Assembly: GCF_006345805.1 (NCBI RefSeq) | Contig: NC_043012.1 | Coordinates: 42,780,001 to 42,844,000, forward strand | Source: Octopus sinensis | Taxonomy: Eukaryota | Direction of reading: 5' to 3' | Length of the DNA: 64,000 nucleotides | In this document: one piece after another, positions 11,960 through 52,357 of the stretch | Layout: every line of letters begins with the position of its first letter | Numbering within the stretch: the stretch's first letter is position 1 | Notes under the pieces: model-generated | Told to the model about the DNA's origin: nothing | The model's input: only the letters and a program-made list of their open reading frames with translations | Databases searched by the model: none | Made by a program: the position numbers and the translations under genes

Positions 11960-14900
11960 TAATTTCTTTATTGCTTGTAAGGGCATACATAGAAGATACA
12001 AAAGGAGGGGCCGGAGACAAACAATGGACAGTCTTACAGGGGAAGGGGTACTGGTGTTGGGGTTACAAACATGAAAGCTGTGATGAAAAATGGTATGAGT
12101 TTAAAAATTTTAATGAAATTAAAATATATAGATAAAATATACTGAAATATATATTTTTTCCTGAGTTTATTTTCAATCCACTGATTTGGAACCTTTGTTA
12201 TGTTTTTCTTTTTTTATTTCCCTTTCTTTTTGGCAAGAAAACGTTTTCCTCCTTCTTGACTGGCTACACCAACATGACCCCATTCATACTCAACTTTCTT
12301 ACCACATTTGCCCATCTTTTTTCATACATGCTGAGAGGCAGGTACTTTCACTCCAGATGGATCTTCCTTAAAAGGTGGAAGTTGAACCAACTTACCAACC
12401 CTTGCCCTGAGATAAAGTGGCCTGCCTCAATCCCTTTTGCACGTATCCTCCACACTGTCTCTTTCAGTATGGTCACTACACAGAAAAAGGCTGCCTTCCT
12501 TTTCTTGTTCAGGAAGGGACGCGGTACAATCTTAACTATGGACTCAGTCGAGAGCCGTACTTCTTCCACATCTGAAATCAGTTGTTCGACATAGGCAATC
12601 AACCGCTTCAAGTCCCCACAGTGTACAAAGGCGTGCATGACAGTTTCACTGATGTGTCTGCACCTCAGACATGTGGGGGTGAGTGTTGAAACCGTGTCTA
12701 GACAACCTCTCTCAAACCAATAGGACTGATCAGTAGCACAACAAAGCCATGGAATTCTGGAAATTATCCAGATATCTTGGTCCAAATGCCCTTTCGAACA
12801 GGTTGGCCAGTTGTTCATCATCAAAGCTTAGTTTCCCCCAGGACATCATCAGACTTAAACTCTACCAACCCTCTATAGAAATCCACAGTAGTAACCGCTT
12901 GCTCAGGAGAACAGAATAAGTGCTTGTCAGCACTCCTTCTGCCATTCTCCTGTCTTAGGTTTCTGTTTGATCCATGTGCCTAAGTCCCAGAGGGACTTCA
13001 ATTGTGGGAAAAGCTGCTTGGCATGTGGTGACCTCACCTGTTCACCATCCAGGTAGCACTGGAGGTCTCTCAACCTCAACGTGTGCTTGCACATCATTAG
13101 CCAAGGCATCCCCAGCCCACCCTTTAACAGTTTCTGGCACCTCACAAGAGGTGGTTTCCCTTTTCACAAAAAGTGGAAAAGGATCTGTTCCAGCTTGGTC
13201 AGCCACAAACCGGGACAGGGCATGACAGTCAGGTGATAGGTTATCACAGATGCTATAAACACCTGTGCAACCTTGTCCCTCCCAAACCAGATCTGGGTTA
13301 TGGCTATCACCTTACTCGCTACCTCACACCAGTTCTCCACCTGGAGACCTGATGAAAACTAGATTCTGAGCAATTTAACCAGTACCTCCGTCCAGCATCC
13401 AATGATGCTGTTAGAAGGCATCAACTTGCCATGCCAGGTGCCGAGTTGCAAACCAACAGATTTTTCATGGTTAATTTTTGCCCATGCCACCACTTCATAT
13501 CCTTTGATGGTGTCTTCTACATGAGGTAGCTGCCCTTCATCAGATATGATGATGGTAGCATCATCCGCATATGCCATCGCACTTCTACCATAACATAGAT
13601 CATGCGGGTCTCCCCCCATCATCCCCAATCTCCGTAGCAGTGGCTCAAGAGCCAATACATACAGGGGGCAGCCCTGGCAAACCAAATATTCAATCACAAA
13701 CGGGCTCGAGAAGAACCCATTCACCCAGACAGATTTGATATTGCAATATAAAGCTTTGATCCAACCTCGGACAGTCAAGCCCAGACTGACCACCTAGAGG
13801 ACCACCACCAAATACCGATGGTTGACCCTATCGAATACCTTAGACTGGTCTAAATTCACCAGTGCCCCACTTTTGCCAGGAACTTTACCCATCCTCTCTA
13901 TGGTGTAGCATATGAGATGAAGGTTGTTGAATATCATCCTTCCTGAGATGGCACATGTCTGTGCCTCTCCCACCAGGTCACCTACAAAAATCCACATTCT
14001 CTTGGCTAGCACCCTAGCCAAAATCTTTAACTCTGTGTTTAGCAGAGTTATGGGCCTATTTTATGTTATTCCCCTTGCTCATGTCCTTCCTGATCAGTGT
14101 CACAACTCCTCGGCTCACAGAGTTGGGAATTCTCCCATTCTGCTGCCAATTTGTGTAAACACTAGCCAGTATGTTCCCGAACAAGTCTGGCATACTTTTA
14201 CAAAATTCGTAAGGTAGTCCATCTGATCACGGTGACTTGTCCCCAGGACACTCAGAAAGTACCTCTATAACCTCCTCAGCCATGATCATCCCTTCCCAGC
14301 GCTTAGCATCGCATGCTGAAAGACATGGGCCACCGGCCAGGAAATCCCGGAGGGAATCCCCATGGACCAACATCCCGCTCCTCCCGAACAATGCAGCAAA
14401 GTGCTCATGAAAGGCCTTGCACATCTCCTGTTCTTTGATCTCCTGTCCATGTTCATTAACCATAGACCTTATTGTAGCATCCACGCCACATTGGGTTTCT
14501 ACTGAACGAGCCCACCTGGCAACATCAATACCCTCACGGCCCAGTGCACGTACTTTAGCCCTGACTCTGCATCCTTCTTGTTTGGCATTGAGGTGTCAGT
14601 CCAAGGCCAATCTCACCGCCAAAACTTGGGGTGTAGAGTCCACTCTCAGCACCTCTTCTAATGCCTTAACTAAATCCCTTTCTACTCTAGTCTGCTCTTG
14701 ACTTAACTGCTTGCTAAATCTAATCGACTCAATTTGAATGGTTCTTTTGAGGGCACCCCACCACCGGTTATTTGACACAGTCCCAGTTAGAACCCTCATA
14801 ACTAACACCTTAATCTGGCTACAGTAAGTTTCGCAATCCAATAGGGACTCGTTCAACTTCCAATAGCCAGATCCCAGTCTATGGACCTTATCTATATGCA

Positions 14901-16846
14901 ACCTACACATCACTAATTTGTTATCAGTGTAAGGTACATAGGTATATTGTGGACAGCTAAAACTAGACTTATCTCTAGTGTTAACTATAATCCTGTCTAT
15001 GTAAGACCTGATCAATTTATGGTGATTAGTCCAAGTCCATATTGGCATGCTTGGATTATCAAGTCTGAATCGATCTACCAGCCTAAATCGCTTCAGCAGA
15101 TTGACAAGGCATGAGTTACATCTGCTATCATTTGAGCCTACACTATCCAGGCGTGCATTGAGAATAACGTTAAAATCACCGAACACAACTAGTGTCTTTG
15201 ACGTCACCAGAAAATTCTCCAGGTGTTGATAGACCTCATTCCATTTGCCTATTGTATTAGGCACGTAAATGCCACCAATGTGAAGGCCTTACCTCTGTAT
15301 GTCAGATCTAGAATGACCAACTCACCTTGTGGGTCCACGAAGATTGTATGAGACTTTCTCATAGCTGTTCAGGAGAGATGAGAACTCCTGCAGCTTGGAC
15401 TCTGTAGTAACCATCACATCGATTCTGTGTGTCCTGAGGTTGTCGAGGAAACACACCTGCTTCCTCTTCAACCCCAAACAATGCACATCTAAATAGCCAA
15501 TACATAGTGTAGCCATGTCAAGACAGTAAGAAGAAGGAAGGAAAATTCTATGCTTACCTGCTCATTCATTTCTTTTCGAGGGGGGTTGTTCTTAGTACCA
15601 TTGGGGTAGGAAGCTCCCCCTCCTTCTTCTTGCACAGAAATGGTTCCATCGGCGGGTTGAATATTTTGGGGAGATCCTTGATATCAACAATGTCTCCTCT
15701 ATTTCTCTCCTTGAGTTCTAAATATAAGTCTCTCAAGACTTTTGCAATGGTTATCATATCATTGTCCTTGTTTTCGTAAACTCTCGTCCGTAGGTGTGGT
15801 TTAATCACTCCTTCCAAATATTTGCTTTGATTCTTGTAGGCAATTACTACAATGTCTTCCTTTTTGGGTATATCATTTTCAATTAAGCTTATTTTCCCAC
15901 ATTTTGGCAGGGCCTTGAACTTTTTCTGGGTATCATTGGTTTTCACTATTTTATTTTTAGGAGTCACTTTCCTTCCACATGAACAGTTAACACTGTTTCC
16001 TCCCCTATGTGAATGGACTCTGGGAGGCTTTCCAAATCAGCGGATGAGGCTTGAGCAAGAATCTCTAGAGTTTGGCCTCACAAGTTTTGTGGGGCCAAGC
16101 TCTAGAGATTTGAAAAATATAAAATTTTTCTCCCTTCTGGTGGGTTATTTTAAATTTTTATTCAAGAAGTTCTTCTACCCAGATATAAGGGTAGAAATAA
16201 TATATTCCCATTCTGCACAGTTTGAGTCGAGAAGTCTTTAGCCTTCTCTACTGACTCAAACCATACTTCTATTGTGGAAAACCTTGTTCTTCAGGCCAGG
16301 TATTTTATTTCCTTTAATACCGGCTTAAGGTATTTTTCAATGGTGCTTTCTTTCAGGTACTCGTATTTCTTGTTTTTGGCATTATATGACTTGTATATGA
16401 TGGTTTTTCTCTTGTTTTGTTAATCATTTCGTTGGAAGGTCTGATGTGACTTTCTCCATTCTCTTCTGCAATCATGATGAAATAGGCCTGAAATTCTTCC
16501 TTTCGCAAAGTAATCTTTTCTGCTCTGCCAACAGCGGCGGCAAAATTCAAATTTTTCAGTTCTTTAACCAAAGACATTTTTTTTTGTAGCAAAAATTACT
16601 AAAAGCAAAGGAAAATAAATGATTGTTCCACAAGGAACACAGTTCACACAAAAACGAATAACAATTTGCTTATCCTTCCCCCAAGGTGGGGGGAATAACA
16701 ATTTACAAATGATTATTTGTAAAAATACAATGTTTCCCTTACAGGAAACCACAATACACAGAAAAAACAATTCCTTAAAGGATAACAATATTAAAAATAG
16801 CAATATTAAAAGCAGCTCTTCAGGTACTGAATGAATGCAACTCCAG
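11960..16846 (-). mobile_element. Tx1-clade (L1 superfamily) LINE, copy A, both ends present, decayed
   Basis: ORF1 pieces (15566-16592), APE (15516-14596; GDFNVIL, WTWTN, YIDRII), RT (QGCPL, YADD) and the ETVMHAFVHC zinc-finger region. Flanked by the 13-bp direct repeat acaggcactgaat at 11947-11959 and 16847-16859. Confidence 0.88.
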
Positions 16847-32370: not shown

Positions 32371-34911
32371 CATCATCATCATCATCATCATTTAGCGTCC
32401 GCTTTCCATGCTAGCATGGGTTGGACGGGTCAACTGGGGTCTGTGAAGCTGGAAGGCTTCGTCAGGCCCAGTCAGATCTGGCAGTGTTTCTACGGCTGGA
32501 TGCCATTCCTAACGCCAACCACTCCGCGAGTGTAGTGGGTGTTTTTTTACGTGCCACCTGCACAGGTGCCAGACAGAGCTGGCAAACGGCAACGAACGGA
32601 TGGTGCTTTTACGTGTCACCGGCACGGGGCCAGGCGATGCTGGCAATGGACACGAACGGATGGTGCTTTTACGTGCCACCGACACGGGGCCAGACAGGGC
32701 TGGCAAACGGCCACGAACGGACGGTGCTTTTATGTGTCACCGGCACGGGGCCAGACAGAGCTGGCAAACGGCCACGAACAGACGGTGCTTTTACGTGTCA
32801 CCGGCACGGGGGCCAGCCGAGGCTGGCAACAGACATGAACGGATGGTGCTTTTACATGCCACCGACACGGGGCCAGACAGAGCTGGCAAACGGCCACGAA
32901 CGGACGGTGCTTTTACGTGTCACCGGCACGGGGCCAGGCGAGGCTGGCAATGAACACGAATGGATGGTGCTTTTACGTGCCACCGACACGGGGGCCAGAC
33001 AGAGCTGGCAAACGGCCACGAGCGAATGGTGCTTTTACGTATCACCGACATGGGTGCCAAACGAGGCTGGCAGCGGACACGAAGGGATGGGTCACTTAAC
33101 CCCTGCTTTCTGATATATGATTTGATTTTGATTGTTCTCACTGGTCTTGCCGGGTCTTCTGACGCACAGCATACTTCCATAGGTCTCGGTCTCTGGTCAT
33201 TTCCTTGGTGAGATCTAGAGTTCGAAGGTCGTGCTTCACCACCTTGACCCAGGTTTTCCTGGGTCTACCTCTTCCACAAGTCCCCTCAACTGCTAGGGTG
33301 TGGCACTTTTTCACACACCTATCTTCATCCATTGTCGCCACATGACCATACCAGCGCAATCGTCTCTCTTGCACACAACATCTGCTGCCTCGTAGGTCCA
33401 ACTTTTCTCTCCAGGTACTTACACTCTGTCGACTATGAACACTGACATTACACATCCAACGGAGCATACTAGCTTCATTTCTCGCGAGCTTAGGCATGTC
33501 CTCAGCAGTCACAGCCCATGTTTCACTGCCATGTAGCATGGCTGTTCGTACACATGCATCATACAGTCTGCCTTTTACTCTGAGCGAGAGGCCTTTAGTC
33601 ACCAACAGAGGTAAGAGCTCCCTAAACTTTGCCCAGGCTATTCTTACTCTAGCCGTTACACTTTCAGCACACCCACCCCCACTACTGACTTGGTCACCAA
33701 GATAACGGAAGCTATCAACTACTTCTAGTTTTTCCCCCTGGAAAGTGATGGAAGTTGTTTTCTGCAGATTTTCAGAGGTTAATGCTCCCGAGCATCTGCC
33801 ACATACAAAAACCATCTTCCTAGTTAGCCTTCCTATGACATTGCTGCACCTCTTATGTGTCCATAGCTTACACTTGGTGCATCTTATAGAGTTTCTACCT
33901 ACACCTTTTCTACAGATCGAGCAGGGCCATCTTCCTGAAGGCGTTTGTGATTTGTCTACCTTCCTACGACTTTGGTTTTAGCTAGGTTGACACTAAGGCC
34001 CTTTGATTCTAAACCTTGCTTTGATTCTAAACCTGAAATTTCTTCTCCAGTTCTGATAGTGACTCAGCAATTAGAGCAAGGTCATCAGCATAGAGGAGCT
34101 CCCAGGGGCATCCTGTCTTGAATTTCTCCGTTATTGCCTGGAGGACTATGATAAATAGGAGGGGGCTGAGGACTGAGCCTTGGTGGACCCCTACCTCTAC
34201 CCGGAATTCTTCACTGTACTCGTTGCCAACCCTCACCTTGCTAGCAGCGTCCCTGTACATGGCTTGCATAGCTCTCACTAACCATTCATCTATTCCTAGT
34301 TTCCTCATTGACCACCAGATAAGGGATCGGGGGACCCTGTCGAAGGCTTTCTCCATGTCAACAAAAGCCAGGTACAGGGGCTTATCTTTGGCTAGGTATT
34401 TCTCCTGCAGCTGCCTTACCAGGAATATAGCATCAGTGGTACTTTTCCCTGGCACGAACCCAAACTGCATCTCGTCTAAACTAACACTCTCTCTAATTAG
34501 TTGGCTTATGACCCTCTCCGTAACCTTCATCACCTGATCCAACAGCTTGATACCTCTGTAATTATTTGTATCTAGGGCATCACCTTTACCTTTGTAGCAG
34601 TTGACTATTATGCTGCTACACCAGTCATTGGGTATAACTCCTTCATGTATCACCTGATTAACTATACAGGTGACTAGGCTATAGCCGACACTACCAGATT
34701 TTTTGAGCATCTCTGCAGTGATACCTGATGGGCCTGGGGCTTTCCCTGTCTTCATGCTTCTAATTGCCTTAGCTACCAAGGAACTATCAACCCTGATAGC
34801 TGGTCCCTCTGTTGGGTCAACGTTCGGCAAACTCTCTTTATCCCATTCATTTTCTTTATTCAGCAACCTTTCATAGTGGCGTCTCCAAGCCTCTCTCTTT
34901 TCCTGGTACAT
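32371..34911 (-). mobile_element. 5'-truncated RTE LINE with long open RT segments and a VNTR in the 3'UTR
   Basis: ORF 34027-34911 (GVHQGSVLSPLLFII, WELLYADD), ORF 33138-33815, and the (CAT)n tail at 32371. Confidence 0.93.
32540..33085. repeat. About 61-bp tandem repeat (about 9 units)
   Basis: ggtgctttta recurs at about 32602, 32662, 32723, 32784, 32845, 32906, 32966 and 33028. Confidence 0.9.
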
Positions 34912-38654: not shown

Positions 38655-40570
38655 GTAAATAATCATTCATTTGTAAAAGTGTTTTTGCTTATTCCTGGAT
38701 ACTATTGAAACAATTGTTTTTGACAGATAAATGCTTTTCCTTCTGCTAATTACTTCAAAAATGAATTTTTTCATGCTCCTTCAATAGAGCTATCTGGAAG
38801 AAAGCTGTTGGGTGAGGGCAGGAGAGAACAGGTAGTAAAATACACAAGTGCTAATAATTTTTAGCTGTAGATGTTGAATTTCACCCTTTCTTTACTATAT
38901 CTCTAGGTAAAAGATGTATTTTAATTAAATTCTAAAATATTTAAGAATTTAAAGTTGGTTTTGTAAACAACTATAACTTTTTGTGTTTTGGGAGAGTCAT
39001 GCCAATAACTCATGCACTGGTCTGTGTGTTATTATTGGCATGATTGCCCTTCCAAGGCTCAGTGTGTGTGTGTGTGTGTTATAATTATTGGTGTAATGAG
39101 CTTCCCAAGACATTGGATTTGTTTCAACTCACAATCTAGCAAACCAAATACAAAAACTATAGTTTTTTTTTTTGTTTTTGATTTTTAATAATGTTGGGCC
39201 TCACGGAGGCGATGACAAGTGACTGAGACCTTTGGCAATATGCTGTGCTTGTCAAACCCAGTGAAATTGTAATTGCGACCATTGCCGGAGTCATGTAAAT
39301 GGCACCTGTGCCAAAGACATGTAAAAAACATCCATTACGCTCTCGGAGTGGTTGGCATTAAGAAGGGCATCCAGTTGTAGAAACCATACCAAATCAGACC
39401 TGGTGCAGCCCTCTGGTTTATCAGTTCCAGTCAAACTGTCTAACCCACACCAGCATGGGAAACGTCAAATGACAACGACGATGATGATGATGTTGTTTTG
39501 AGCACTACAAAAAGCTCTCTTACAATTTTTGCCCGAAAGATGCTCCAATTACAAGTAAGTACAAGTAAAATCAGTAACATTTATCCCCACTTAAATGTAG
39601 ATGTTCTGTTAAAACAGACTATACTGCAGCTGATACCATGAGAGAAACTGGTTTCTGGTGCAAAAATTACTCACATCACTAGCAATATAATCAGGCATGC
39701 TTTTTGCACCAGAAGCGTTTGTGAATGATATCTTTTGAAAAGATTAGCACCACAACACTTGTCTTGATGAGTTCTATCATATGAGGTAAAAAAAAATTTA
39801 TAGGTTTTGAATTTGCTTTTAAGCATTAGTAGTTTTTCTATTAAAAACTTTTTTTGACATAATTTACATCATCAGATTCCTCTAATGAGATCTATCAGAA
39901 AAGTTGAATTTAAATATAGTTTTCTTTTGAAATAAGAATAATATTTGGAGTCAAAGTCAATTTCAGGTGTTAATCTCCTTTTTTTTCCGCTAGTTTTTAC
40001 CTCAGTACTTTTTGTCTACTGAATACTTTTGCATGATCTATCATATAGGCTAAAATAAAATATAAATTTAAAAAAAAACAACTAAAAAATAAACAAGCAA
40101 AAAAACATTTGGACTCAGTTGATTTCAGGCTTTACACACCTGTTTCTGACCTGACATATTTACTGAAACTTTTTTTTCTACCAAAGCATTTTCAAATTTT
40201 ATAGCTGAAAGTGTAGCTTAGGATGTGACCAATCTAAAAATGTAAGCATCATCTGGTTAAAAACTGAGTTAGTGGCAAAGCCTAGAAGTGGTCGCGAGTG
40301 ATTAAATGTTGACCTTAAAAATATTATTCATACACTACTGTGTGTGAATGATATATATATGATTAGGTTTTATAAATATTTCTCAAATTTACTTTGAATT
40401 TTTTGTTTACCTGTAATTTTAATTTGCCTGTAAGGTGAGTAACAAGTTTTGATTTAATTTCTCTTGTAAACAAACATAAGTTTGTTTTTGAAGTGTTGAA
40501 ATGTATTGTAGACCAAGTAGAAAGTATATATAAAGGATAAAATCCTTTTAAGAGCAGAAAAATTTGCTGG

Positions 40571-40648
40571 CAACCAGCTTTGAGGATCGAACTCACACCC
40601 CTCCAATATCCGGTTGGAGTGCTCTCTCCTTTAAGCTAAACTGCTGAC
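40571..40648 (-). other. tRNA-like sequence (SINE head or tRNA pseudogene)
   Basis: A-box-like TAGCTTAAAGG, B-box GTTCGATCC, anticodon arm ctccaa-CCGGATA-ttggag and T arm tgag/ctca; lacks the conserved U33. Confidence 0.55.
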
Positions 40649-40789
40649 CGGTGAATAATTCTTCAATTTTAGAAGTTATAAAGTCATCCAGAAATGCTAG
40701 ATGTCATATAGAGAACGTCATATGTATACAAACCTAAGTTTGTTTTTGAAGCACTGAAATGTATCATAGAACAGGTAGAAGGATGTATT

Positions 40790-43700
40790 TTTCAACATGC
40801 AGGACAGTTTCACCATCCTGCTTGCATCTTGCTCAAACCATCAATGGCGCACACCCATGTCTAAAGACCTTTTCTTGAACCAGTAAAGCTCCTCTGTAAC
40901 ATTGGCAGGCCAGGGACTTTTGGTAATTATCCATAGGCCCCGGCCCAAATGTTCTTTGGAACAGGTTGGCCAGTTGATCTTTGTCGAAGCCCAGAGTTTC
41001 TCCCAGGACGTCGTTACACTTAATTTCTACTAACCCTTAAACTTAAACTCAACTAACGAGGTAGTACACCCCGCCATCGGCATTGCCTGACTGGGAGAGA
41101 AGCACGTGTGCCTGATGGCACTCTGCATGCCACACACCCAACCTCTGTCTATACTTGATCTATGGGTTCAGTTTGGTAAACGATGTGAACTGTGGAAACA
41201 ACAGCTTGATGAACAGAGACCACATCTGCTCACCGTCCAGGTAAAACCCGAGGTGCCTAAGAGGTGTCTGCGCATTTTTAGCCACAGCATCCCTAGCCCA
41301 CCCTTCAGTGGCTTTTGGCAGCAGATGGAGCGCCTTACAAGAGGTCTGCTGCCCCTCCACAAAAAGCGAAAGAGCATGCATTCCAGTTTGTTCAGCCACG
41401 AATCGGTCAGGTAGTAGGTGATTACAGAGGCGATAAACACCTCTCCAACCTCCGCCCTCCCTTTCAAGGACAGCCTCCGCTCAGACCAGGTCTGAGTTAG
41501 GAGTGCTACCTCGCTCCAATTCCTCTCTATCTGGAGATCTGGACCTAACCAGACTCCAAGCATTTTTACTGGCCCTTCCATCCAACGTCCCACGACGCTG
41601 TCGGAAGGCATTGACTTGCCCCTACAGGTGCCGGTTTGCAAGCCGATCAATTTATTCCAGTTGATTTTCGCTCCTGCCAGCGTTTTGTAATCCCTTAAGG
41701 CCTCACCTACCCACTGTAGGTGCTTGACCTGGGATACGATGACAGTGATGTTGTCCGCATATGCTGAAGTTGACTTTCCACACCCTAGATCTTGCGGAGC
41801 GTCCCTCATAGCTTCCAACCTCCTCGGCAATGGCTTGAGGGCCAAAACGTAGAGAAGTGGGGAGAGGGGGCACTCTTGATGTACCGAATGTTCAATGCTG
41901 AATGGCTCTGAAAAGAAAACGTTCACCTGAACTACTGATTCAATGTTGCTGTATAAAGCGTTAATCCATCTGTGGACGGTCGGCCCGAAGCCATCCGCCA
42001 TGAGGACCGCCGCCAGATACTGATGGTCTACCCTGTTGAATGCTTTCGATTGGTTTAAATGGACCATACCCCCACCCTTGCCAGGAATCCTATTTACCCT
42101 TTCTAAGACATAGCGTAGAAAGTGGAGATTGTCGTGGATGGTCCTGCCAGGGATGGTGCAAGGTTGTGCCTCGCCAACAAATTCACCCATGACCTGCACT
42201 AACCTTTTTGCTAAAACCTTGGCCAAAATCTTCAACTTTGCATTAAGCAGAGTGATGGGCTGAAAATTATCAATTAAATCACCCTTGTTTGGGTCCTGTT
42301 TTAGTGCCACCACCCCTTGGCTCACAGACTTGGGAATTCTCTCGTTCTACTGCCTGTTGGTGTACACGCATGCAAGTAGGTGCCCAAACAAGTCTGGCAT
42401 GCTACTATAGAGTTTGTAAGGCAGACCATTGAGTCCCGGCAATTTGTTCCCACTGCAGTCTGCCAACACATCTTTGATTTCCTTGGCTGTGATTGGCGCT
42501 TCACAAAATTCTGCATCCCGCCCCGACAGATATGGCAAACCGGCCAGGAAGTCTGCAAGCTTTTCCTTGTGCTCCAGTCTGCCACTCCTCATGAATATTT
42601 GGGTTCATTTACTGATCGACCATATGGGTCCGTCAAAGATCGAATGGTTGAGTTGTTGCCACACTGGCTCTCTACCACCCGGGCCCATCCGGCCACGTTG
42701 ATCCCTTCCTGTCTCATTGCACGTATCTTAGCCCTGACAATGCACCCTTCGTGTTTAGCATTGAGATGTTGGTCGAGTGCCAACCTTGCCGCTAACACTT
42801 TCGATGCACCGCCTGACCTCATTTCCTCGTCTACTGCCTCAACTAGTTCCTTTTCTACTAGCTAATTCTTTTCTAAATATAATTGACTCAAATTTGATGG
42901 CTCTTTTCCAATAGCGACTTGTTTAGCTTCCAGTAACTGGTACCTCGTCTTCACATACTATCTAGGTCGTGCATACAGGTCAGTAATTTGTGATTGATGT
43001 AGCTGACGATATGGTGTTGTGGACATCTAAGTATTTTCTTATCTTTCTTTCTAGTAATGATTCTATCTATGTAAGATCTGGACTACCCGTCATTTCTTGC
43101 CCAGGTCCATGCTGGAATGTCTGGGTGGCCCAGTCTGAATCGATCTGCCAACTTAAAATGACTTAGCAGATCGTTGAGGTAAGGGTATCCCCTCCTATTC
43201 TTTCTCGAGCCAACATAATTTATGCGGGCATTGCAAATTGTGTTGAAGTCGCCGAGCAATAGTAACGTGTTCGACATGCCAAGAAAATTCTGTCTGGCTT
43301 TTCCTTCACAGGGAGCATAGACAGCGACCAGCCTAAACACTTTACCACTGCTGTGCGTCACATGCAAAACAACCAACCTGCCTTCTGGATCTATAAAGAC
43401 AGTTCTAATCACTAAATCCAGGTTTTTCCTGACTAGTACTGCCACTCCTCGCCCCCTCCCAGTTGGCAGGGAGAAACATATTTCTCGTAGCCGTTTAGAA
43501 GGGGCGAAAAAGCCTGCAGCCCACTCAGTTTGGATTCGGTAATTACAACTACGTCCAAACGATGCAACCCAAGGTCGTCAAGGAGGCAACCTTGCTTCCA
43601 ATCCGACCCCAGACTGCGTACATTTAAACAACCGACTTTAAATGAGAATGTGAAAGATAAATCATATGTTTAAAAATTACTGTTTTAATGGGAGAGAGGG

Positions 43701-45315
43701 TGTAGTTTCACCCTCCTCATTTCTGTCTGCAAGTGTTGAGGTTTGCGAGGTCATTTTTTTAGAGAATTGCCTGTACAGATGGCTCGAAAAGTTCATCTGT
43801 AACAGGCTGATGTCCTCCGCAAAAGATTTTTTTAGTTTGAAATAGTCTGTGTTGTCGATAATATAAAACTCGACATTTGCAAGAATTGTTTTATTTAAAT
43901 CTGTTGCGATATATTTTTTCGACGACTTCATTAAAACAATTTGGTCTCTCAAGAGTTTGTTATTTTTGTTTATCGCTGTGAAGTTGTTTCTCTTTTTTTT
44001 TATTAGGCGATTGTGGAGGGGTATGTGTGTGTGCTTGTAGATGCGTAGGTGTTTGTAGGTGTCTGTGTTTGTGTGTCCTTTTTCCAGTGTGTGTGTTTTT
44101 TTGGCTAAGTGTGTGTTTGTGGGTGTGCTTTCTCTCTCTCTCTCTCAGCATAGTCCTGTGTATCCGAAGAGGGGGGGTCGTTTCCGTCTTCTTTTTGAAG
44201 GTTCCATGGTGACCCACTCCTGGTGTTGTTGTTGTTTTCTCCCGCTGTCGACTGTACCTCAGTAGTTTGTGCGCGTGACATGATTGCTATTTCTAGTGGT
44301 GTGGTCATTGTCTTCATTGCCTTTTCTGTTGTGTTTCCTTTGATTGTTTCTTTTTTCTTACAGTTCGACCTTATGTGGCCTTTCTCACCACATTTATAGC
44401 ACCTCAGCTTTCGCCCCTCGACTACCACCATCAGGCTGGTATCTTCCCCAATTATAATTGAACAGGGCATTTCTTCTCAATCGATGGGGTTTGCTTGAAT
44501 GAAGAGCTCTAAGGCTTGTCCAACCCAGTTCATGTGGTGGTATCTCTTCGCCCGTAGAATGGTAATTTTTTCCTCTCTGCCCATGAGGATAGCAGCTACC
44601 AGCCAGGCCACATATATTTCGGGTGGTATATCACTGACCCTAACTTTGGAAGTTCTCCTTCCTAAGTTGACTTCAATGTCATTGTTGAATGTTCTCTGGC
44701 TTTTTCTTCGATAGGGAAACGCACTGCCGAAGCAACTACCCCTTGCTATATAACTTGTTTGTTGCCATATTGGCCTCAAGCATTTCTCTATGGCTTCCCT
44801 CGTCACGAAGTCAATTTTTCTATTTTTGATGTGGTAAGTCTTATATGTTTAGTGTTTTTCTCTCCGTCATGTTGATTAATTCACTGGGGGGTAGCAGCTT
44901 CATATTTTCACCTTGTAGTAAACTTTGATATTTTAAAAAATCTTCCTTGCTTATTTCAATATTTTCACAGGGGCGACTTGCTGCATTCACAAAATTAACT
45001 CTAGATTTTTCTTGTTGTGTAGCCTCACTAAACATTTTATCGTCTGCCTTTGTAGCGAGTGCATGCGATGCTTCTATATCTTTACCGCTATGCCTTGAAA
45101 CAAAATTTCAAAGATTTCCTTGGACTCTGAAGAAATTGGTGGCAAATTCATGTTTTTAGCTGTTTCCTCCTTGAAACAAGGGGGAAAAGACAGCAAAATT
45201 CTGCTGTAACAGCAGAAAAGAAGTGGTCTCGATGACCAAAATGGTAAATTTTCACAATCTTCAGCATAAAGACAATCTTTCACAGTGGAGCAAAGAATAA
45301 CACGGCCAAAAAACA
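40790..45315 (-). mobile_element. Tx1-clade LINE, copy B, 3'-truncated
   Basis: ORF1 with CYKCGEKGHIRSNC knuckle (44105-44470), APE (GDFNTI), RT ORF 41168-42325 (CPLSPLLY, YADN); breaks off just after the CKQDGETVLH motif. Confidence 0.88.
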
Positions 45316-45327
45316 GCAGAAGTCACT

Positions 45328-45753
45328 AGTGGCAGAAGTCACTAGAAAAACTCTTATATATTTGCAAACAGGCCTTTTCTTTCATCGTGATCTGGTGATT
45401 ACCGCCCGTTGATAAGAGGCAATAACCTCGAAACCATGGTCTGGTGCGTATCACTTAGGCTTACGAGAAAGGGATGGCCTCCCTTTGCAAATACCATAAG
45501 GGCACAGATAGTGTGCCTAAAGCCAGCTGGAGACGATGATCTTCTGGGGCTAAAAAGCTACAGTAACACCCCCCTTTGTGGTTAGCCATATTGAGATGGC
45601 TATTATACTTTACATTGTCGAGCGATTACTGTTTACATCTCGTTCTGAGATTTAATAATGCTTACAGACAGTTTTTTGAAATCAGTGGCAGAAGTCACTA
45701 GAAAAACTCCTATGTATTTGCAAACAGGCCTTTTCTTTCATCGTGATCCGGTG
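45328..45753 (+). repeat. 356-bp tandem unit (one full copy plus the start of a second); candidate structured RNA gene
   Basis: agtggcagaagtcactagaaaaactc starts at 45328 and again at 45684; the second copy is interrupted by Tx1-C and resumes at 52102-52357. Confidence 0.9.
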
Positions 45754-48700
45754 TTTTGACTCATCTAGGGACCCCTCTTTCATCTGCGTATTGAGAAGTT
45801 AGCTGCCTATTTTGTTGAGTGAGTTCGTTTTTTGTTCGTCGTTGTTTGTGTTTGCTCGTGAATTGAACAGTTATCCGTTGTGTGACAGTAATTTTTGCCC
45901 TACAGGGCTGAAAATTCTGTGTATAAACATTGTTATTACCTTCGGGGTAATTTTTTTTTTTATTGAAAAATTGGTTCTCATAATTTGAGAAATGCAGTTC
46001 GACTTGGTGTCGAGGAGCAACTTTCCCGTGATGGGAAAAGGTGAACAGAAGGATATCGAGGTTAAAAAACAGTCTTTTTCGGCTGCAGTGAACGGAACCG
46101 TAACGGAAGTAGAATTTAAAATAGAACAGTTGTTCAAATACCGGAATTTGGTAAAAAAGGAAGGCAACGAAATAAAACTGGTACCGCCGCAAGCGATATT
46201 ACAGGAAATAAAGGCCAAGACAGTTGTATACAAGGTTTACAGTAACAAAGAGAAAAAAATAATGGACGTGAAGAACGAAATAGTAGAGAAGTGCTTGTCC
46301 CCGGTGTGGAGCAAAATTCGCTACGTCGGTCGAGGTGCCCGCAGCGCTACCGTTGAAGTACATTTCGACTCGGCTGATGTGGCAAGAGAGATTTCATCGA
46401 TGACCTTAAAAAGTGAGGACATCATGTTACTACCTACTTATATGGGAAAAAGAACTGCGAAACTATATGTGGAAGACATTACAAGAGGATATGATATAAT
46501 GTGGGTAGCAGCGGCGGTTCTGCACGACGTAGAGCAGAAAGTTTCAATTCTGCAGATGAAAAGGAAAGAGGAGGTAAACTGGAAGGGACAAGCACTCGAA
46601 CTCCTCGTTTAAGCAGAAAATAATGTGCTAGAAAACTTACCCGATAGGGTATTTATTGAGGAGGGAATTACAATGAGAGTGTCAGTGGAGGGGCGCAGAC
46701 CTAGGTGTTTCAAATGTGGTGAAAAGGGTCACATCCGCTCGAACTGCATAAAAAAAAAGAAAAACAGCGAAGCCCCTCCTCAAAGTGCTTCAAACACAGA
46801 AAAAGAAAAGGCGGAAAAAGACCCCAAGACTACGACAAGGAAGGGAATCGAAACGGAAGATAAAAATGAACAAAAATGGAATTTACACATGTGACACACA
46901 AAAGAAAAAAAGAGAATACCCTGGACTCCCCTCCCCAAAGAAAAAATCAGCAAACACCGCAGAGATACATACAAAACAAATTCCCCAGCCCTACCCCCAC
47001 GGCACTGTCCCTCCCCATAAAACAAGATTGGAAAAAATTGATTTAAAAAAATGAAAAGATTGTAGCATTCGATGAGAAGAACGATAGAGTGTTTAAGTAT
47101 TTAAAATTTTCAAAACTGAAATTATTCAGTAAGTCTGCAGACACTAAGTCGACCACTCGTTTTGCAAAAATAAAGGAAGACGAGTGGAAGGAAAAAACAC
47201 TCCAAGAACATTTTAAAAATAACCTCATTAGAGATGTAACCAACGAAATACTGGAGGGCAAACTTACAATAACCCCGGCAACCACACCTACCCAGAGCCC
47301 TGCAGCTACGACCACAAGGGAGGAAGAAGGGGAAGCATGCAGATTTAAACTGTCATGCTCCCTGTCCCAACCGTAAGTTTATTTTTTTCTCTCTCTCCGA
47401 CAATGGCAAAGCTGGGTTGTGTGAATGTGCGTGGAATGGGGTCGAAATGGAAACAAATTTGTCTCCTGAACGACCTCACGACACACGGAGTGGACGTAGC
47501 TATTGTAACCGAGTCCAAGATGAACGGGGCCCAAGCGTTCTCGCCTCTTCTAAATGGTTTCGAGAAATTTATTTCTCCTAGCCGAGGAGGAGGAAGGGGC
47601 GTGGCAGTCCTTATCAGGAAGAGCTTGGACTTGCAGGTAAGTACTGTCTTTCTGGACCCAGAAGGCAGGCTGGTCGTTCTGGATGTGACCCATGTAAGTA
47701 AACAGTCCTTCAGGTTGGTAGCTGTCTACGCTCCGAATGAGTGTAGGCAGTCGGGTTTTTTTCGGAATCTGGAGCACTTTTTAGTGACGTCGAAAACGGT
47801 AGTCTTAGTAGGGGACTTTAACACTGTCCTCGAAGCGCGGGTCGACAGTGTTGGCTCAACCAATAGGAAGGGGAACCCTAGTCTCAAGGGTCTACTAGAG
47901 AGCTTTAATCTAGTAGACCGTTATCGACTGGATGAGCCGAGCGTTCCACAGTGGACGTGGAGTAATAACGACGGCTCACGCAGATCGTATATACATAAGA
48001 TATTCGTTAGGAAAAGAGATAAGGATACGTTTAGTTGTCCACAGTTTCACATTGTGCCTTACACGGATCACAAATTTGTGACTTGTAGGGTGCAATTAGA
48101 TAAGTGTCATAGACAGGGACCCGGGTACTGGAAGCTGAACAAGTCTATTTTGAATTGTGAAGACTTCCGTACCCGGATTAAGGTGTTAGTACAGAGGGCA
48201 TTATGTGGCACCATCATTAACAATAGATGGTGGCACTCCCTCAAAAGAGCCATTCGTTCAGAGTCCATTAGATTTAGCAATCAGCTAAGGTTAGATAGGT
48301 CTAGGATAGAGGACGATTTAGTTAAGAATCTAAACGAGGCAATGGAATCTGGCTCTGCATCCGGAGTGATGGCGGCAAGGACGGTATTGTACCGTCACCT
48401 TAACTCCAAACACGAAGGTTGCAGAGTTAGAGCTAAGCTACGCGCAGGGAAACGAGAAGGTATTAACGTTGCCGGATGGGCCTGTCGAGTGGAGAGTCAG
48501 AGAGGCAACAAAGCTTCAATCAAGTCTTTAACTGACGAACAGGGACACAAGATCTATGGACAGGAGGAGATGCAAAAGTTTCTTCACCAGCATTTCGCCT
48601 GCGCGTTTGGGGGTGGTGGTTCGCTGGAGCCGGGCAGGGCCTTAACCCATTCGATACCAAATCGCCCAAAGCCGCCCGAAAAAAATTTTGGTTAATGTGA

Positions 48701-51700
48701 CCAAACCGCCCAAACTCGCCCGTATTTACCTATTCATATTTAAATGAGAATATCAGAGCAAATCTCTTTAGTACATTCGTGAAAACACGTATTATACTTC
48801 GTAAAGAGTTCAACTACAGTTTTGTACAACAATCTAAGTGTAATTTTAATTCCGTGAATTTTGGGAGATTTTTTTCCGAAATTTGTTCCTATTGTGTTTT
48901 CAAAATTTGTAATTCTGACAAAAAATGGATACGAATTTCATTATATCAAGCAGCGAGTCAGAATTCGAAGGATTTTCTACTGAAGACCTTCATAAATCTA
49001 ACTCAATGACTGAAAAAAAAGCACGTGGTATTTGATAATGAATCTGATGTTTCATTTTCCGAAAGTGAAAATAGTGAATTCGAGAGCTCCGACAGCGATA
49101 AAGAAAATGAATTGGCACCTGAATGGAGTGAAAATTTAAAAACTGTTTCTTTCGGTGATTTTTCTGAAGAAACTGGACCAAGCCACAGACTTTCCCAGAA
49201 GAGTAAAGCCTTAGACTATTTCTTTTTACTTTTTCGAATGAGCCCATTTGAAATCATTACGGCGGAAACGAACCGTTACGCTAAACGTAAACAAAGCGAA
49301 GGAAAAGATAGTTAGTGGTTTCCCATAACCTTAAATGAAATTAAGACTATTTTGCCGTAAATATTATTATGGGTATCAGAAAGTTACCCAGAATAACAAA
49401 TTCTATCGTAAAATTTTGTTGTATACCCAATTGAATATTAGCTAATAACCCATTTTCTATAGCGATGTTTGAACAAAATTTTAATAATTTTATATTTTGT
49501 TGAATTTACCTGTATCTACCTGCAATTAGAGTCACTTTGTGACAAAAATTATAGTATAGAATTGGTTGAGAACATTTCATTAAATTATCTTCCAAAATTC
49601 GCGTTAATATATTGATAAATAAAAAAGTTATAGTTGTTTAATGAAACCAGACTAAATATATGATTATGTCAGAAATTAATTGAAACACATAAGGGGTGTA
49701 TTTTGGTCAGAAATATAGTAACGAAAGGGTTAAAGGACTTCCCAGCCGGCGGACCGCGGTTCTCGGGGCGTGAGGTGGAGTGCTGTGAAGGAGTGATCAC
49801 TCCCGCGGAGATAGAGGGGGTACTGGCCAGATGTGCCGGGGTTGGATGGTCTGCCCTACGAGTTTTATCAAAGTATGCCGGACTTGTTCGGGGGAATACT
49901 GGCAGGCGTCTACGCGAACTGGCAGCAGAACGGGAGAATTCCCAGTGGTGACGCTAATCCAGAAAGACCCGAGCAAGGGGGATAACATTAGTAATTACAG
50001 GCCCATAACTCTACTTATTGTAGAGTTAAAGATTTTGGCCAAGGTGTTGGCAAAAAGGTTGATGACTGTCGTGGAGAAACTTGTAGGGAAAGCACAGACA
50101 TGTGCAATTCCAGGCAGGTCGATCCAGGACAATCTTCACCTTATACGCTACACCTTAGATAGGGTGGGTAAATTAACCGGCAAGGGCGGGGTAATGGTCC
50201 ATTTAGACCAAAGTAAAGCGTTCGATAGGGTAGACCATAAGTACCTGGCGATGGTCCTCGAAGCGGCTGGACTGGGCCCTGAATTTCGCGGGTGTATCTC
50301 CGCTATGTATAGTGGCATCAAGTCCACCGTCCAGATAAACGGTTACCTAATGGAACCGTTTTCGATCGAATGTTCAGTTCGTCAAGGGTGCCCCTTGTCA
50401 CCACTTTTGTACGTGTTGGCTCTCGAGCCATTGCTGCGAAAGTTGGAGAGGCTGGGAAGTAACCCGGATGAGATCGGAGGCGGGAGGACGGTTTCTGCTT
50501 ATGCGGATGACGTCACCCTCATCGTGTCCAATGAGGCTCAGCTACCTTGTGTAGTAGAAGATGCTATCAGAGGATACGAGGCGGTGGCAGGAGCAAAAGT
50601 TAACAAGGACAAGTCGATTGGCTTACGCCTCGGCACCTGGAGGAGCAAGTCGATATCGTCCAGTGCCGTGGGACACTGGACAGATGGTCCTGTTAAGTTG
50701 CTAGGAGTTTGGTTTGGCCAGACTCCCAAACGGAGAGGAATTGGAGTGAGGTGACGGGCAAGGTGGAGGCCATAGTACGGACCTGGTCCGGAAGGTTTCT
50801 GTCCTTGAAAGGAAGGGCGGAGGTGGTACAGATGTATATTGCATCTGTAATCACTTACCGCCTGACCGTTGTCCCTTGCCCCGATTCATGGCTTAGCAAG
50901 TTGGAGCGAATCCTTTTCTGCTTTTTGTGGAAGGGAGGAAAGCCACTTGTGAGGCGCTCCGTTTGCTGCCAGGAACTGTTAAAGGGTGGGTTAGGAATGC
51001 CTTGGTTGATGATGCGCAGACATGGTTGAGGCTGAAGCATCTCTGGCACCACCTGGAGGGTGATAAGGTGTGGAGTCTGCTGGCAGGGGAATTTTTCCCA
51101 AGACCGGCTTCCTTAGTGAATTTTAAACCCGGTTGCATCAAAAGACGGAATCTGACTTTATGGCAAAAGGAGTGCCGACAGGCACTCACGCTGATCCACA
51201 AGGCGGGCAAGGCTGGCTGCGGAAATACCACCTCGGTATTTTATAGCAGGCTGGTAGAGGCAAAGAACGACGACGTCCTAGGAGGAGCTCTGGGGTTCGA
51301 CGAGGACCAGCTTACCAACCTGTTTAAAAATACTTTCAGGACGGGGTATTTGGATAATTTCCAAAGATCCCTAGCCTGGCAGTGTTATAGGAATGCTTTA
51401 CCTGTTCGCGAGAAGTTATCGCGGCACGGAATTTCAGTGCCACCGACATGTCCAAGATGCGGGTTGGACGATGAAACCATCCAGCACGCTTTTGTACACT
51501 GTCGGCAGTTGTCAGACTTGATAAGTTACGCAGAACACGTGTTATCGCATCTGGGACGAGTACAGCTGTCGGCTGAGTCTATGATTAAGATGATACCGCC
51601 AACTGGACTCTCGAAGGAAGGTGAGGCATGTTTTCACTGCACGGTTGCAGTAGTAAAAGAATGCATGTGGCGTACAAGAATGGAAGGAGTCGCAATAGGA

Positions 51701-52101
51701 TCCTTTGTCTCAGGCCCCGGCTTGCTCACTTACTTCAGATATCATCTGAAGAGCAAAATGGGGCTGGAAAAGAAGACCTTACCACGAGGTATGTATGAAA
51801 AAAGATGGAAGGAAGTGGCGAAAAAGGTGGGTGTCAGAAACCCAGTTTAACTATGGATGGAGAAGAAGAAAGGAAAGCTGCTGGGCCTTATAGGTTGCCG
51901 GGGTTTAAAATATATCAGTAAGATTTCAATCTAATGTAATGTTATATTAGTCAATGCAAAGGACAATTTAAATACAGTTTTTTGTATAATGAATAATCCA
52001 TATATTTTGGAAATTTTTAAACGAACCACTTAACTGTTTTTTGTATGTATGTCCTGTATTGTTCTTCTATGTACTGATTTTATAATCATAATAAAGAATT
52101 A
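45754..52101 (+). mobile_element. Tx1-clade LINE, copy C, full-length with TSD, interrupted by a piggyBac
   Basis: ORF1 45992-about 47375 (CFKCGEKGHIRSNC; one nonsense codon and frameshifts); ORF2 from ATG 47403 (APE, RT QGCPLSP/YADD, CPRCGLDDETIQHAFVHC) to 51850. Duplication atcgtgatc(c/t)ggtg at 45740-45753 and 52102-52115. Confidence 0.93.
48646..49729 (+). mobile_element. Internally deleted piggyBac DNA transposon
   Basis: TTAA duplications at 48642-48645 and 49730-49733; termini CCCATTCGATAC / GTAACGAAAGGG; PGBD-like ORF 49025-49315 (DYFFLLF...IITAETNRYA), continuing WFPITLNEIK...IIMGIRKLP. Confidence 0.9.
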
Positions 52102-52357
52102 ATCGTGATCTGGTGATTACCGCCCGTTGATAAGAGGCAATAACCTCGAAACCGCGGTCCGGTGCGTATCACTTAGGCTTACGAGAAAGGGATGGCCTCC
52201 CTTTGCAAATACCATAAGGGCACAGATAGTGTACCTAAAGCCAGCTAAAGCTACACTAACACCCCCTTTTGTGGTTAGCCATATTGAGATGGCTATTGTA
52301 CTTTACATTGTCAAGCGATTACTGTTTACATCTCGTTCTGAGATTTAATAATGCTTA
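52102..52357 (+). repeat. Continuation of the interrupted 356-bp unit
   Basis: Near-identical to 45384-45664 except for a deletion of about 25 bp that removes the ggagacgatgatcttc hairpin. Confidence 0.9.

What the first reader, a model, noticed from the sequence alone, without database searches (positions are those of the whole stretch)
45328..45683. Unidentified 356-bp tandem unit that looks like a ~290-nt Pol III (type 3) structured RNA gene
Seen: upstream motif gtggcagaagtcactag, TATA-like cttatata (45353-45360), and a purine start about 30 nt later (A45384). The next 288 nt have no T4 run and end in T6 (45672-45677). Several stems are present: GAGG/CCTC; AAAGGGA/TCCCTTT 45468-45486; GGCACA/TGTGCC 45501-45517; closing GGCTT/AAGCC or alternative TTAGGC/GCCTAA; GGAGA/TCTTC; TAGCCAT/ATGGCTA 45583-45602. 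The second copy lacks exactly one hairpin. I could not match it by eye to 5S, 5.8S, U1-U6, U11/U12, U3, 7SL, 7SK, RNase P/MRP or a telomerase template. Known: Tx1 elements commonly target multicopy small-RNA genes. Inference: a lineage-specific multicopy ncRNA gene or SINE-like master unit.
Basis: partly seen in the sequence, partly recalled or inferred. Interest (0 to 1): 0.75.

Follow-up and report, generated by a model that had tools for sequence, protein, structure and literature searches.

The report
Hammerhead-ribozyme retrozyme repeat hosting a LINE
The 356-bp unit is not a new RNA polymerase III gene but one copy of an abundant mobile repeat in this octopus-type genome that carries a hammerhead self-cleaving ribozyme, and a LINE family lands at one fixed site beside that ribozyme.

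Summary
The identification changes. The unit (45328-45683) contains a type I hammerhead ribozyme at 45394-45455 (Rfam HH9-like, 32.4 bits, E 3.7e-6, below the curated cut-off of 52), with predicted cleavage after C45441.

Across 67 copies from at least five sequence families the fold is kept: 94% of cells pair, against 19-54% in slid controls. The C3-G8 core pair covaries with U3-A8, helix II covaries, and the centre of helix III stays palindromic.

The unit is a dispersed repeat with thousands of first-look candidates. Copies have 9-12 bp target duplications, prefer (TA)n, and show partial-tandem plus inverted-copy architecture like Penelope-like elements. I read it as a non-LTR retrozyme.

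The second copy is split by a 6.35-kb L1/Tx1-type LINE (45754-52103) with a 12-bp duplication. Thirty of 30 5' junctions sampled elsewhere in the genome, and 29 of 30 3' junctions (the 30th a tandem LINE at the same site), lie at this site.

Not shown: expression, circular RNA, the Penelope partner and the promoter type. The absence of T4 runs is not beyond chance (P 0.31).

Three earlier notes of this scan, on other windows of this genome, reached the same reading.

The parts
45316..45327 (+). Short extra copy of unit positions 6-18 at the left edge of the array, directly after the 5' end of a minus-strand LINE
   Evidence: Other copies of that LINE's 5' region end at window 45303-45315.
45328..45683 (+). 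Retrozyme unit, copy 1 (356 bp, complete period)
   Evidence: It is 42% G+C and its longest stop-free stretch is 64 aa.
45329..45366 (+). Conserved upstream blocks: palindrome GTGGCAGAAGTCAC, an A-run, an AT-rich stretch and the invariant ATTTGC. Function not shown (promoter or RNA element).
   Evidence: Conserved across families.
45394..45455 (+). Type I hammerhead ribozyme, copy 1. Helix I is 45394-45398/45451-45455 and 45403-45408/45442-45448. The core UUGAUAA is 45409-45415 (U3 45409, A8 45414). Helix II is 45416-45419/45426-45429. GAA is 45430-45432. Helix III is ACCAUGGU at 45433-45440. C17 is 45441, with predicted cleavage between 45441 and 45442.
   Evidence: RF02275, 32.4 bits, E 3.7e-6; covariation.
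45672..45677 (+). T6 run (T5 in most copies), conserved in all families just upstream of the unit junction
   Evidence: T45677 reads C in other copies.
45684..45753 (+). Retrozyme unit, copy 2, 5' part (unit positions 1-70)
45742..45753 (+). Left copy of the LINE's 12-bp target-site duplication (cgtgatccggtg)
45754..52103 (+). L1/Tx1-type LINE, 6350 bp, decayed copy. ORF1 is 45992-46612, then an in-frame stop, then a CCHC knuckle near 46715-46760. The endonuclease piece is 47355-48695, the reverse transcriptase piece 49831-50754 and the zf-RVT piece 50927-51850. AATAAA lies at 52091-52096. There is no poly(A) tail.
52104..52115 (+). Right copy of the target-site duplication (cgtgatctggtg, one C/T difference)
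52104..52357 (+). Retrozyme unit, copy 2, 3' part. It ends at unit position about 335, has a 25-bp internal deletion, and is followed by (TA)n.
52112..52173 (+). Hammerhead ribozyme, copy 2, intact. Helix III is ACCGCGGU. Predicted cleavage is after C52159, 56 nt downstream of the LINE's last base.

Best explanation
The unit is a copy of a non-autonomous, non-coding retroelement of the animal 'non-LTR retrozyme' kind: a roughly 335-356-nt repeat carrying a canonical metazoan type I hammerhead ribozyme.

Shown here:
- The ribozyme motif and its conservation through compensatory changes.
- The dispersed, transposed nature of the copies.
- Their insertion architecture, which matches that of Penelope-like elements.
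- The fixed-site LINE insertions.

Inferred from the known family:
- Transcripts longer than one unit bring two ribozymes together through the palindromic helix III.
- They cut after GUC (C45441 and C52159 here) and release a unit-length RNA.
- A host RNA ligase circularises that RNA.
- A Penelope-like reverse transcriptase/GIY-YIG endonuclease, abundant and open-framed in this genome, copies it into (TA)n-rich sites. This would give the partial tandems, the inverted 5'-truncated copies and the roughly 47-bp tail.

A separate L1/Tx1-type LINE family uses the repeat as its landing site. It nicks at TTCAT|CG and 12 bp further on, after GGTG. This is at the 5' edge of ribozyme helix I, so each insertion leaves an intact ribozyme immediately 3' of the LINE.
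For: Ribozyme:
- HH9-type match at 45391-45464, E 3.7e-6, and 35.2 bits in a second copy.
- U4, A9, G12 and A14 are among only nine invariant columns in 67 copies.
- 94.3% of cells pair, against 19-54% in slid controls. The core pair reads U-A 44, C-G 17, U-G 5, other 1. Helix II pairs switch G-C/A-U in 26 and 12 copies.
- The centre of helix III stays palindromic across six variants: U-A 13, C-G 6.
- An exact 26-nt core pattern occurs 123 times in the genome, against 0 for the reversed control.
- The circular fold of the unit has z -4.6.

Mobile element:
- 3821 first-look candidates and copies on many chromosomes.
- Architecture of [inverted copy ending at position 288][partial tandem][1 to about 335] in 15 of 27 loci.
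- Duplications of 8 bp or more in 14 of 27 loci, against 0 of 27 displaced controls.
- This matches published Penelope-like insertion structure (PMC8557442) and retrozyme traits (PMC7229834, PMC4209133).
- Penelope-like ORFs: at least 5029 GIY-YIG candidates, many in a 781-aa open frame.

LINE:
- 30/30 5' junctions and 29/30 3' junctions lie at the same site. The 30th is a tandem LINE.
- The junctions fall in at least four ribozyme families.
Against: - The Rfam curated cut-off is not reached (32-35 bits against 52), and sister families fall below E 0.01 in a larger search.
- The minimum-energy fold of the isolated motif is unremarkable (z -1.2).
- Within the family the ribozyme region diverges as fast as the rest, 0.057-0.063 per site. 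Most copies are therefore decaying relics.
- One large family has a C-A mismatch at the base of helix II (19 of 67 copies).
- No RNA evidence. In runs guessed to be RNA, depth over the unit simply tracks genomic copy number.
- No Penelope-like element sharing this repeat was found.
- Arrays in the sampled loci are short, at most about 2 units. Published retrozymes range from dimers to large multimers.
Confidence: 0.8

Rival explanations
1. A host non-coding RNA gene transcribed by RNA polymerase III from a type 3 (U6-like) external promoter, giving a roughly 290-nt structured RNA with a cellular function.
For: The palindrome, the AT-rich box plus ATTTGC, TTCATCG and the T5-6 run are conserved across diverged families, with U6-like spacing. 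From my own memory and not checked here: newt satellite 2, another hammerhead repeat, was reported to use an snRNA-type promoter.
Against: Copies are transposed insertions with target duplications in microsatellites. Retrotransposed copies include the supposed external promoter, which a 290-nt transcript could not carry. The lack of T4 runs is not significant. Individual copies decay evenly. A Pol III promoter could still drive a retrozyme, so only the 'host gene' part is disfavoured.
Confidence: 0.05
2. The units are solo or truncated terminal repeats (pseudo-LTRs) of an autonomous Penelope-like element, not an independent non-autonomous family.
For: The tandem, inverted and tail architecture is that of Penelope-like elements, whose terminal repeats carry hammerheads (PMC4209133, PMC8557442). 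A 2026 preprint derives animal retrozymes from such repeats (10.64898/2026.07.22.740005).
Against: None of about 90 loci with 1.5-kb flanks has Penelope-like coding sequence next to a unit. The tandem period is 356 bp with no ORF. The one Penelope-like element fetched shares no sequence with the unit. Only one such element could be examined.
Confidence: 0.1
3. A SINE mobilised by the L1/Tx1-type LINE itself; that is, the LINE's passenger rather than its target.
For: The two are physically associated. Both end in AT-rich tails with a loosely similar AATAA motif.
Against: Unit insertions go to (TA)n and varied sites and carry inverted and tandem structure. The LINE goes only to one 17-bp site inside units. 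The termini are not shared.
Confidence: 0.03

Closest known systems
Metazoan non-LTR retrozymes (Cervera and de la Pena 2020, PMC7229834)
   Same: Non-coding repeats of 170-400 bp in tandem, with a type I hammerhead, low G+C (42% here), target duplications and a highly self-paired predicted circular RNA.
   Different: Not reported for cephalopods in that paper or its held supplement. Arrays here are short and carry inverted copies. Expression and circularity were not tested.
Hammerheads of Penelope-like element terminal repeats (Cervera and de la Pena 2014, PMC4209133)
   Same: The U3-A8 core variant, a short palindromic helix III implying dimeric action, and pairs of motifs on opposite strands 100-700 bp apart.
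   Different: Here helix I (5+6 bp with an internal loop) and helix II (4 bp with a 6-nt loop) are of the canonical kind, not the minimal kind with a long helix II. No coding element is attached.
Rfam Hammerhead_HH9 (RF02275)
   Same: Full-length alignment to the model (positions 1-77), with the same helix I internal loop and a loop 2 rich in A.
   Different: Scores 32-35 bits against a gathering score of 52. The core has U3-A8 and helix III is shorter. HH9 is a single-copy intronic ribozyme of amniotes.
Schistosoma Sm-alpha/Sj-alpha SINE-like elements and newt satellite 2 (from my own knowledge, not checked here)
   Same: Repeats of about 330 bp with an active type I hammerhead, abundant and dispersed or tandem.
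   Different: No sequence relation was tested. The promoter types reported for them (internal Pol III boxes; snRNA-type) were not shown here.
Site-specific Tx1-clade LINEs (Tx1L in Tx1D, Keno in U2 genes, Tx1-Mar in Mariner-N4; PMC4494074)
   Same: Endonuclease, reverse transcriptase and zf-RVT domains; an ORF1 with a CCHC knuckle; insertion at one sequence in a multicopy target, including other transposons; precise junctions; tandem re-insertion.
   Different: The target, a hammerhead retrozyme, appears in no paper found. Clade membership by phylogeny was not tested.

Membership tests
Hammerhead ribozyme (type I) | Core boxes CUGANGA and GAAA | tested here: met
   The boxes read UUGAUAA and GAAA at 45409-45415 and 45430-45433. 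U4, A9, G12 and A14 are invariant in 67 copies. Position 3 pairs with position 8 as U-A in 44, C-G in 17 and U-G in 5 copies. This variant is published for Schistosoma elements (PMC4209133).
Hammerhead ribozyme (type I) | Three helices around the core, with helix I open, supported by covariation | tested here: met
   94-96% of cells paired against 19-54% in slid controls; 12 pairs with changes on both sides against 5.7+-1.3 in shuffles (0 of 500). Helix III is 2 bp plus a palindromic loop.
Hammerhead ribozyme (type I) | Cleavage triplet NUH before helix I | tested here: met
   GUC at 45439-45441 and at 52157-52159.
Hammerhead ribozyme (type I) | Curated Rfam score threshold | tested here: not met
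   32.4 and 35.2 bits against 52 for RF02275. There were no matches at the gathering threshold.
Hammerhead ribozyme (type I) | Self-cleavage | not testable with these tools
   Needs in vitro transcription of monomer and dimer constructs.
Non-LTR retrozyme | Short non-coding tandem repeat (about 170-400 bp) carrying the ribozyme, low G+C, with target duplications | tested here: met
   The period is 356 bp. G+C is 42% and there is no ORF over 64 aa. There are 1 to 2 units per locus. Target duplications are 9-12 bp.
Non-LTR retrozyme | Expressed as unit-length linear and circular RNA | tested here: inconclusive
   Only contigs of runs guessed to be RNA were available, and depth tracks DNA copy number. 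One error-free contig spans the unit-to-LINE junction (45680-45864), but its start is set by k-mer uniqueness.
Penelope-like mobilisation | Partial tandem, adjacent inverted 5'-truncated copy, one-sided tail of tens of bp, microsatellite targets | tested here: met
   inverted copies always end at unit position 288 and direct copies at about 335 or 288. Targets are (TA)n and (CA)n. Compare PMC8557442.
Penelope-like mobilisation | An autonomous partner sharing the repeat | tested here: inconclusive
   Open RT+GIY-YIG ORFs are abundant. The one element fetched is unrelated, and no more genome sequence could be fetched.
Tx1-clade site-specific LINE | AP endonuclease, reverse transcriptase and C-terminal zinc-binding domain; ORF1 with a CCHC knuckle | tested here: met
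   Pfam Exo_endo_phos, RVT_1 and zf-RVT. The CCHC knuckle follows ORF1 in frame.
Tx1-clade site-specific LINE | Insertion at one target sequence | tested here: met
   30/30 5' junctions and 29/30 3' junctions. The target consensus is TTCAT|CGWRAWCYGGTG|ATT.
Tx1-clade site-specific LINE | Reverse transcriptase groups with Tx1 in a phylogeny | not tested
   The homologues found are unnamed fragments. No reference sequences were at hand.
Type 3 RNA polymerase III gene (U6/7SK-like) | A proximal sequence element shared with host U6/7SK genes, plus a TATA box at about -30 | not tested
   Host snRNA promoters could not be fetched. The AT-rich box is variable across families, and only ATTTGC is invariant.
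Type 3 RNA polymerase III gene (U6/7SK-like) | Transcript body free of T4 runs, ending in a T run | tested here: inconclusive
   This is true of the sequence but expected by chance (P 0.31). The T5-6 run is conserved across families.

The most novel reading that the evidence does not exclude
A three-tier parasitism. A Tx1-type LINE lineage has specialised on the retrozyme, which itself depends on Penelope-like elements. The LINE uses it not only as a harmless landing site but also to make its own RNA. Transcription would enter from the retrozyme's conserved upstream blocks, about 15 nt before the LINE. The intact hammerhead 56 nt past the LINE's end would trim read-through transcripts to a defined 3' tail of target sequence. 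That tail would then anneal to the nicked target for precise priming. This would be analogous to R2's use of a ribozyme on its rRNA co-transcript, but with a ribozyme supplied by the target.
Probability: 0.2. Interest if true: 0.75.

Novelty: new member of a known kind. Interest (0 to 1): 0.5.

Why it matters
It gives a name to what is probably a large share of the 'unclassified SINE' fraction of octopus genomes (PMC13282606 lists 893 such families and mentions no ribozymes). It extends hammerhead retrozymes to cephalopods.

It also offers a natural data set for the ribozyme. Sister families carry either C3-G8 or U3-A8 cores, with U-G intermediates, and six different palindromic versions of helix III. 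These bear directly on the core base pair and on dimeric action.

The LINE's fixed site adds a ribozyme-bearing retroelement to the known targets of site-specific LINEs. It also gives a testable case of one mobile element exploiting another's RNA-processing signal.

Tried and rejected
- Rfam at the gathering threshold on the whole window gave nothing. The hammerhead appeared only in an E-value scan of 800 bases.
- Tandem Repeats Finder missed the repeat.
- The mir-297 and mir-466 matches in related loci are microsatellite artefacts. The RAGATH matches are chance.
- RNA evidence: all runs are contigs of uncertain type, so nothing could be concluded about starts, ends, circles or level.
The one element fetched is unrelated.
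- The protein search for the reverse transcriptase returned only unnamed fragments, so it gave no clade name.
- I first read the minus-strand LINE as ending at a tRNA-like sequence. One search showed that sequence to be a separate 275-nt repeat, so I dropped the idea.
- An extended helix I between the TTCATCG block and the sequence after the ribozyme needs different registers in different families. I do not claim it.
A shorter one was used instead.
- For statistics only, I computed a majority sequence of the non-coding 335-nt repeat in scripts. It is not reproduced here, and no repair of any LINE frame was attempted.

Full report
**What is there.** The window holds unit copy 1 at 45328-45683. 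Copy 2 follows at once (45684-45753), is interrupted at 45754, and resumes at 52104-52357. The interruption is a 6350-bp LINE on the same strand. It has an ORF1 (45992-46612, one in-frame stop, then a CCHC knuckle) and pieces with Pfam Exo_endo_phos, RVT_1 and zf-RVT domains. It is flanked by a 12-bp duplication, cgtgatccggtg and cgtgatctggtg. Copy 2 lacks 25 bp, which removes one hairpin, and ends at unit position about 335 next to (TA)n.

**The ribozyme.** A gathering-threshold Rfam scan of the window found nothing. An E-value scan of 45100-45900 found a full-length match to Hammerhead_HH9 at 45391-45464 (32.4 bits, E 3.7e-6, cut-off 52). A second copy scored 35.2 bits in a 29-kb search. The motif has these parts:
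- Helix I of 5+6 bp with an internal loop.
- The core UUGAUAA.
- A 4-bp helix II with a 6-nt loop.
- GAAA.
- A helix III of two pairs around a palindromic tetraloop.
- GUC, followed by the cleavage site after C45441.

This is the architecture published for canonical animal type I hammerheads, which are thought to act as dimers through the palindrome (PMC4209133). The U3-A8 core is also published there as a natural covariant of C3-G8.

**Is the fold under constraint?** I collected 67 distinct copies from at least five sequence families and counted pairs.
- 94.3% of cells pair, against 19-54% when partners are slid.
- The 3-8 core pair is U-A in 44 copies, C-G in 17, U-G in 5 and unpaired in 1.
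- Two helix II pairs switch between G-C and A-U in 26 and 12 copies.
- On a 23-sequence alignment of unit positions 58-288, 95.6% of cells pair. Twelve pairs change on both sides, against 5.7+-1.3 in shuffles (0 of 500).
- The two central positions of helix III stay self-complementary: U-A 13, C-G 6. Six palindromic versions occur.
- U4, A9, G12 and A14 are among nine invariant columns.
- An exact 26-nt pattern of core plus helix II occurs 123 times in the genome, against 0 for the reversed control. Of 100 listed, 99 keep the covarying pair.

Within one family the ribozyme region diverges as fast as the rest. Constraint therefore acted on the source copies, not on each insertion. One family has a C-A mismatch at the base of helix II.

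**The rest of the RNA.** Folded as a circle, the 356-nt unit has an energy of -108.3 kcal/mol, z -4.6 against 200 dinucleotide shuffles, with 65% of bases paired. Published retrozyme circles are described the same way (PMC7229834). The isolated ribozyme alone folds unremarkably.

**It is a mobile element.** The genome search gave 3821 first-look candidates, with copies at 90-96% identity on many chromosomes. In 27 loci the insertion has a recurring form:
- an optional inverted, 5'-truncated copy whose outer end is always unit position 288;
- then a partial unit running to 356;
- then 1 to about 335, or 288 in some loci.

Flanking duplications of 8 bp or more occur in 14 of 27 loci, against 0 of 27 displaced controls. 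Unique-sequence examples are 9-12 bp. Targets are strongly biased to (TA)n. Partial tandems, an adjacent inverted truncated copy, a one-sided tail and microsatellite targets are the published signature of insertion by Penelope-like elements (PMC8557442). The genome holds at least 5029 GIY-YIG candidates, many in a 781-aa open frame. One that I fetched is RT plus GIY-YIG but shares no sequence with the unit. No unit locus has such coding sequence nearby. The partner is therefore inferred, not identified.

**The LINE is site-specific.** I searched the genome with the LINE's last 254 bases and its first 234 bases.
- In 29 of 30 3' junctions the LINE end is followed directly by a hammerhead-bearing unit. 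The 30th is another LINE at the same site.
- All 30 5' junctions read ...TTCATCGWRAWCYGGTG followed by the LINE's TTTTGACTC.
- Thirteen elements seen at both ends show the 12-bp duplication. A related subfamily makes 16 bp.
- The targets belong to at least four families that differ in core, helix II and helix III, so the conserved 17-bp site is what is recognised.
- The site is the 5' edge of helix I. Each insertion therefore leaves an intact ribozyme whose cleavage site lies 56 nt past the LINE.

Known Tx1-clade targets are a piggyBac element, U2 genes, microsatellites, a Mariner and LTR elements (PMC4494074). I found no paper linking Tx1 with hammerheads. I did not test the clade assignment by phylogeny, and the homologues found are unnamed.

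**The Pol III idea.** Three points count against, or fail to support, the idea:
- The absence of T4 runs is expected by chance (P 0.31).
- Retrotransposed copies include the supposed external promoter.
- The LINE begins with TTTT, which would stop Pol III at once.

Host snRNA promoters could not be fetched. The polymerase remains open.

**Expression.** The unit's 31-letter words occur in runs under four organism labels. All the runs are held as contigs and their RNA label is a guess. Depth over the unit relative to the LINE is within about threefold of that in a DNA run, so there is no sign of specific abundance. One error-free contig covers 45680-45864, across the unit-to-LINE junction, but its start coincides with the first locus-specific 31-mer. 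I draw no conclusion from it.

**Earlier notes.** After my own reading was fixed (stated), a word search found three earlier reports of this scan on other windows of this genome. They describe a Tx1/L1-type LINE nested at a fixed site in a hammerhead retrozyme. They agree with what I tested independently here.

**Verdict.** The unit is a new member of a known kind, the hammerhead retrozyme, not a new RNA class. The LINE's choice of target is the more novel element.

Noticed in passing
window 40523-40799 (- strand): A repeat of about 275 nt with a tRNA-like head (ARAGORN call at 40572-40645; Rfam tRNA 26.8 bits, just under its cut-off). There are 695 first-look candidates in the genome. Its copies also sit in partial-tandem plus inverted arrangements, which suggests the same insertion machinery as the retrozyme.
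   Followed up: partly
window 40869-45315 (- strand): A second L1/Tx1-type LINE (RT, endonuclease fragment, CCHC ORF1), only 66% identical to the plus-strand one. Its family's 5' end (45303-45315 by comparison with other copies) abuts the left edge of the retrozyme array. No target duplication was found.
   Followed up: partly
window 12521-15343 (- strand): A third fragment of a related LINE (65-70% identity to the plus-strand LINE).
   Followed up: no
window 32505-33090: A G+C-rich tandem array with a 61-bp period, about 9 copies at 60-90% identity.
   Followed up: no
window 48650-49850: In a DNA run, the summed contig depth over this part of the LINE is about ten times that of the rest of the element. 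This stretch is therefore shared with a much more abundant repeat.
   Followed up: no
L091:1421-3763 (G000:C6:12729800-12735300): An open 781-aa Penelope-like ORF (RVT_1 plus C-terminal GIY-YIG). At least ten other loci give the same score and the same open-frame length. An inverted repeat lies upstream of it.
   Followed up: partly
L035:1755-1834 and L054:1756-1835: A fourth target family whose hammerhead-like motif reads CCGAUGA or CCGAUGC (C at core position 4) and has a 3-bp helix III with a tetraloop. It may be an inactive or unusual variant, yet the same LINE has inserted at the equivalent site.
   Followed up: no
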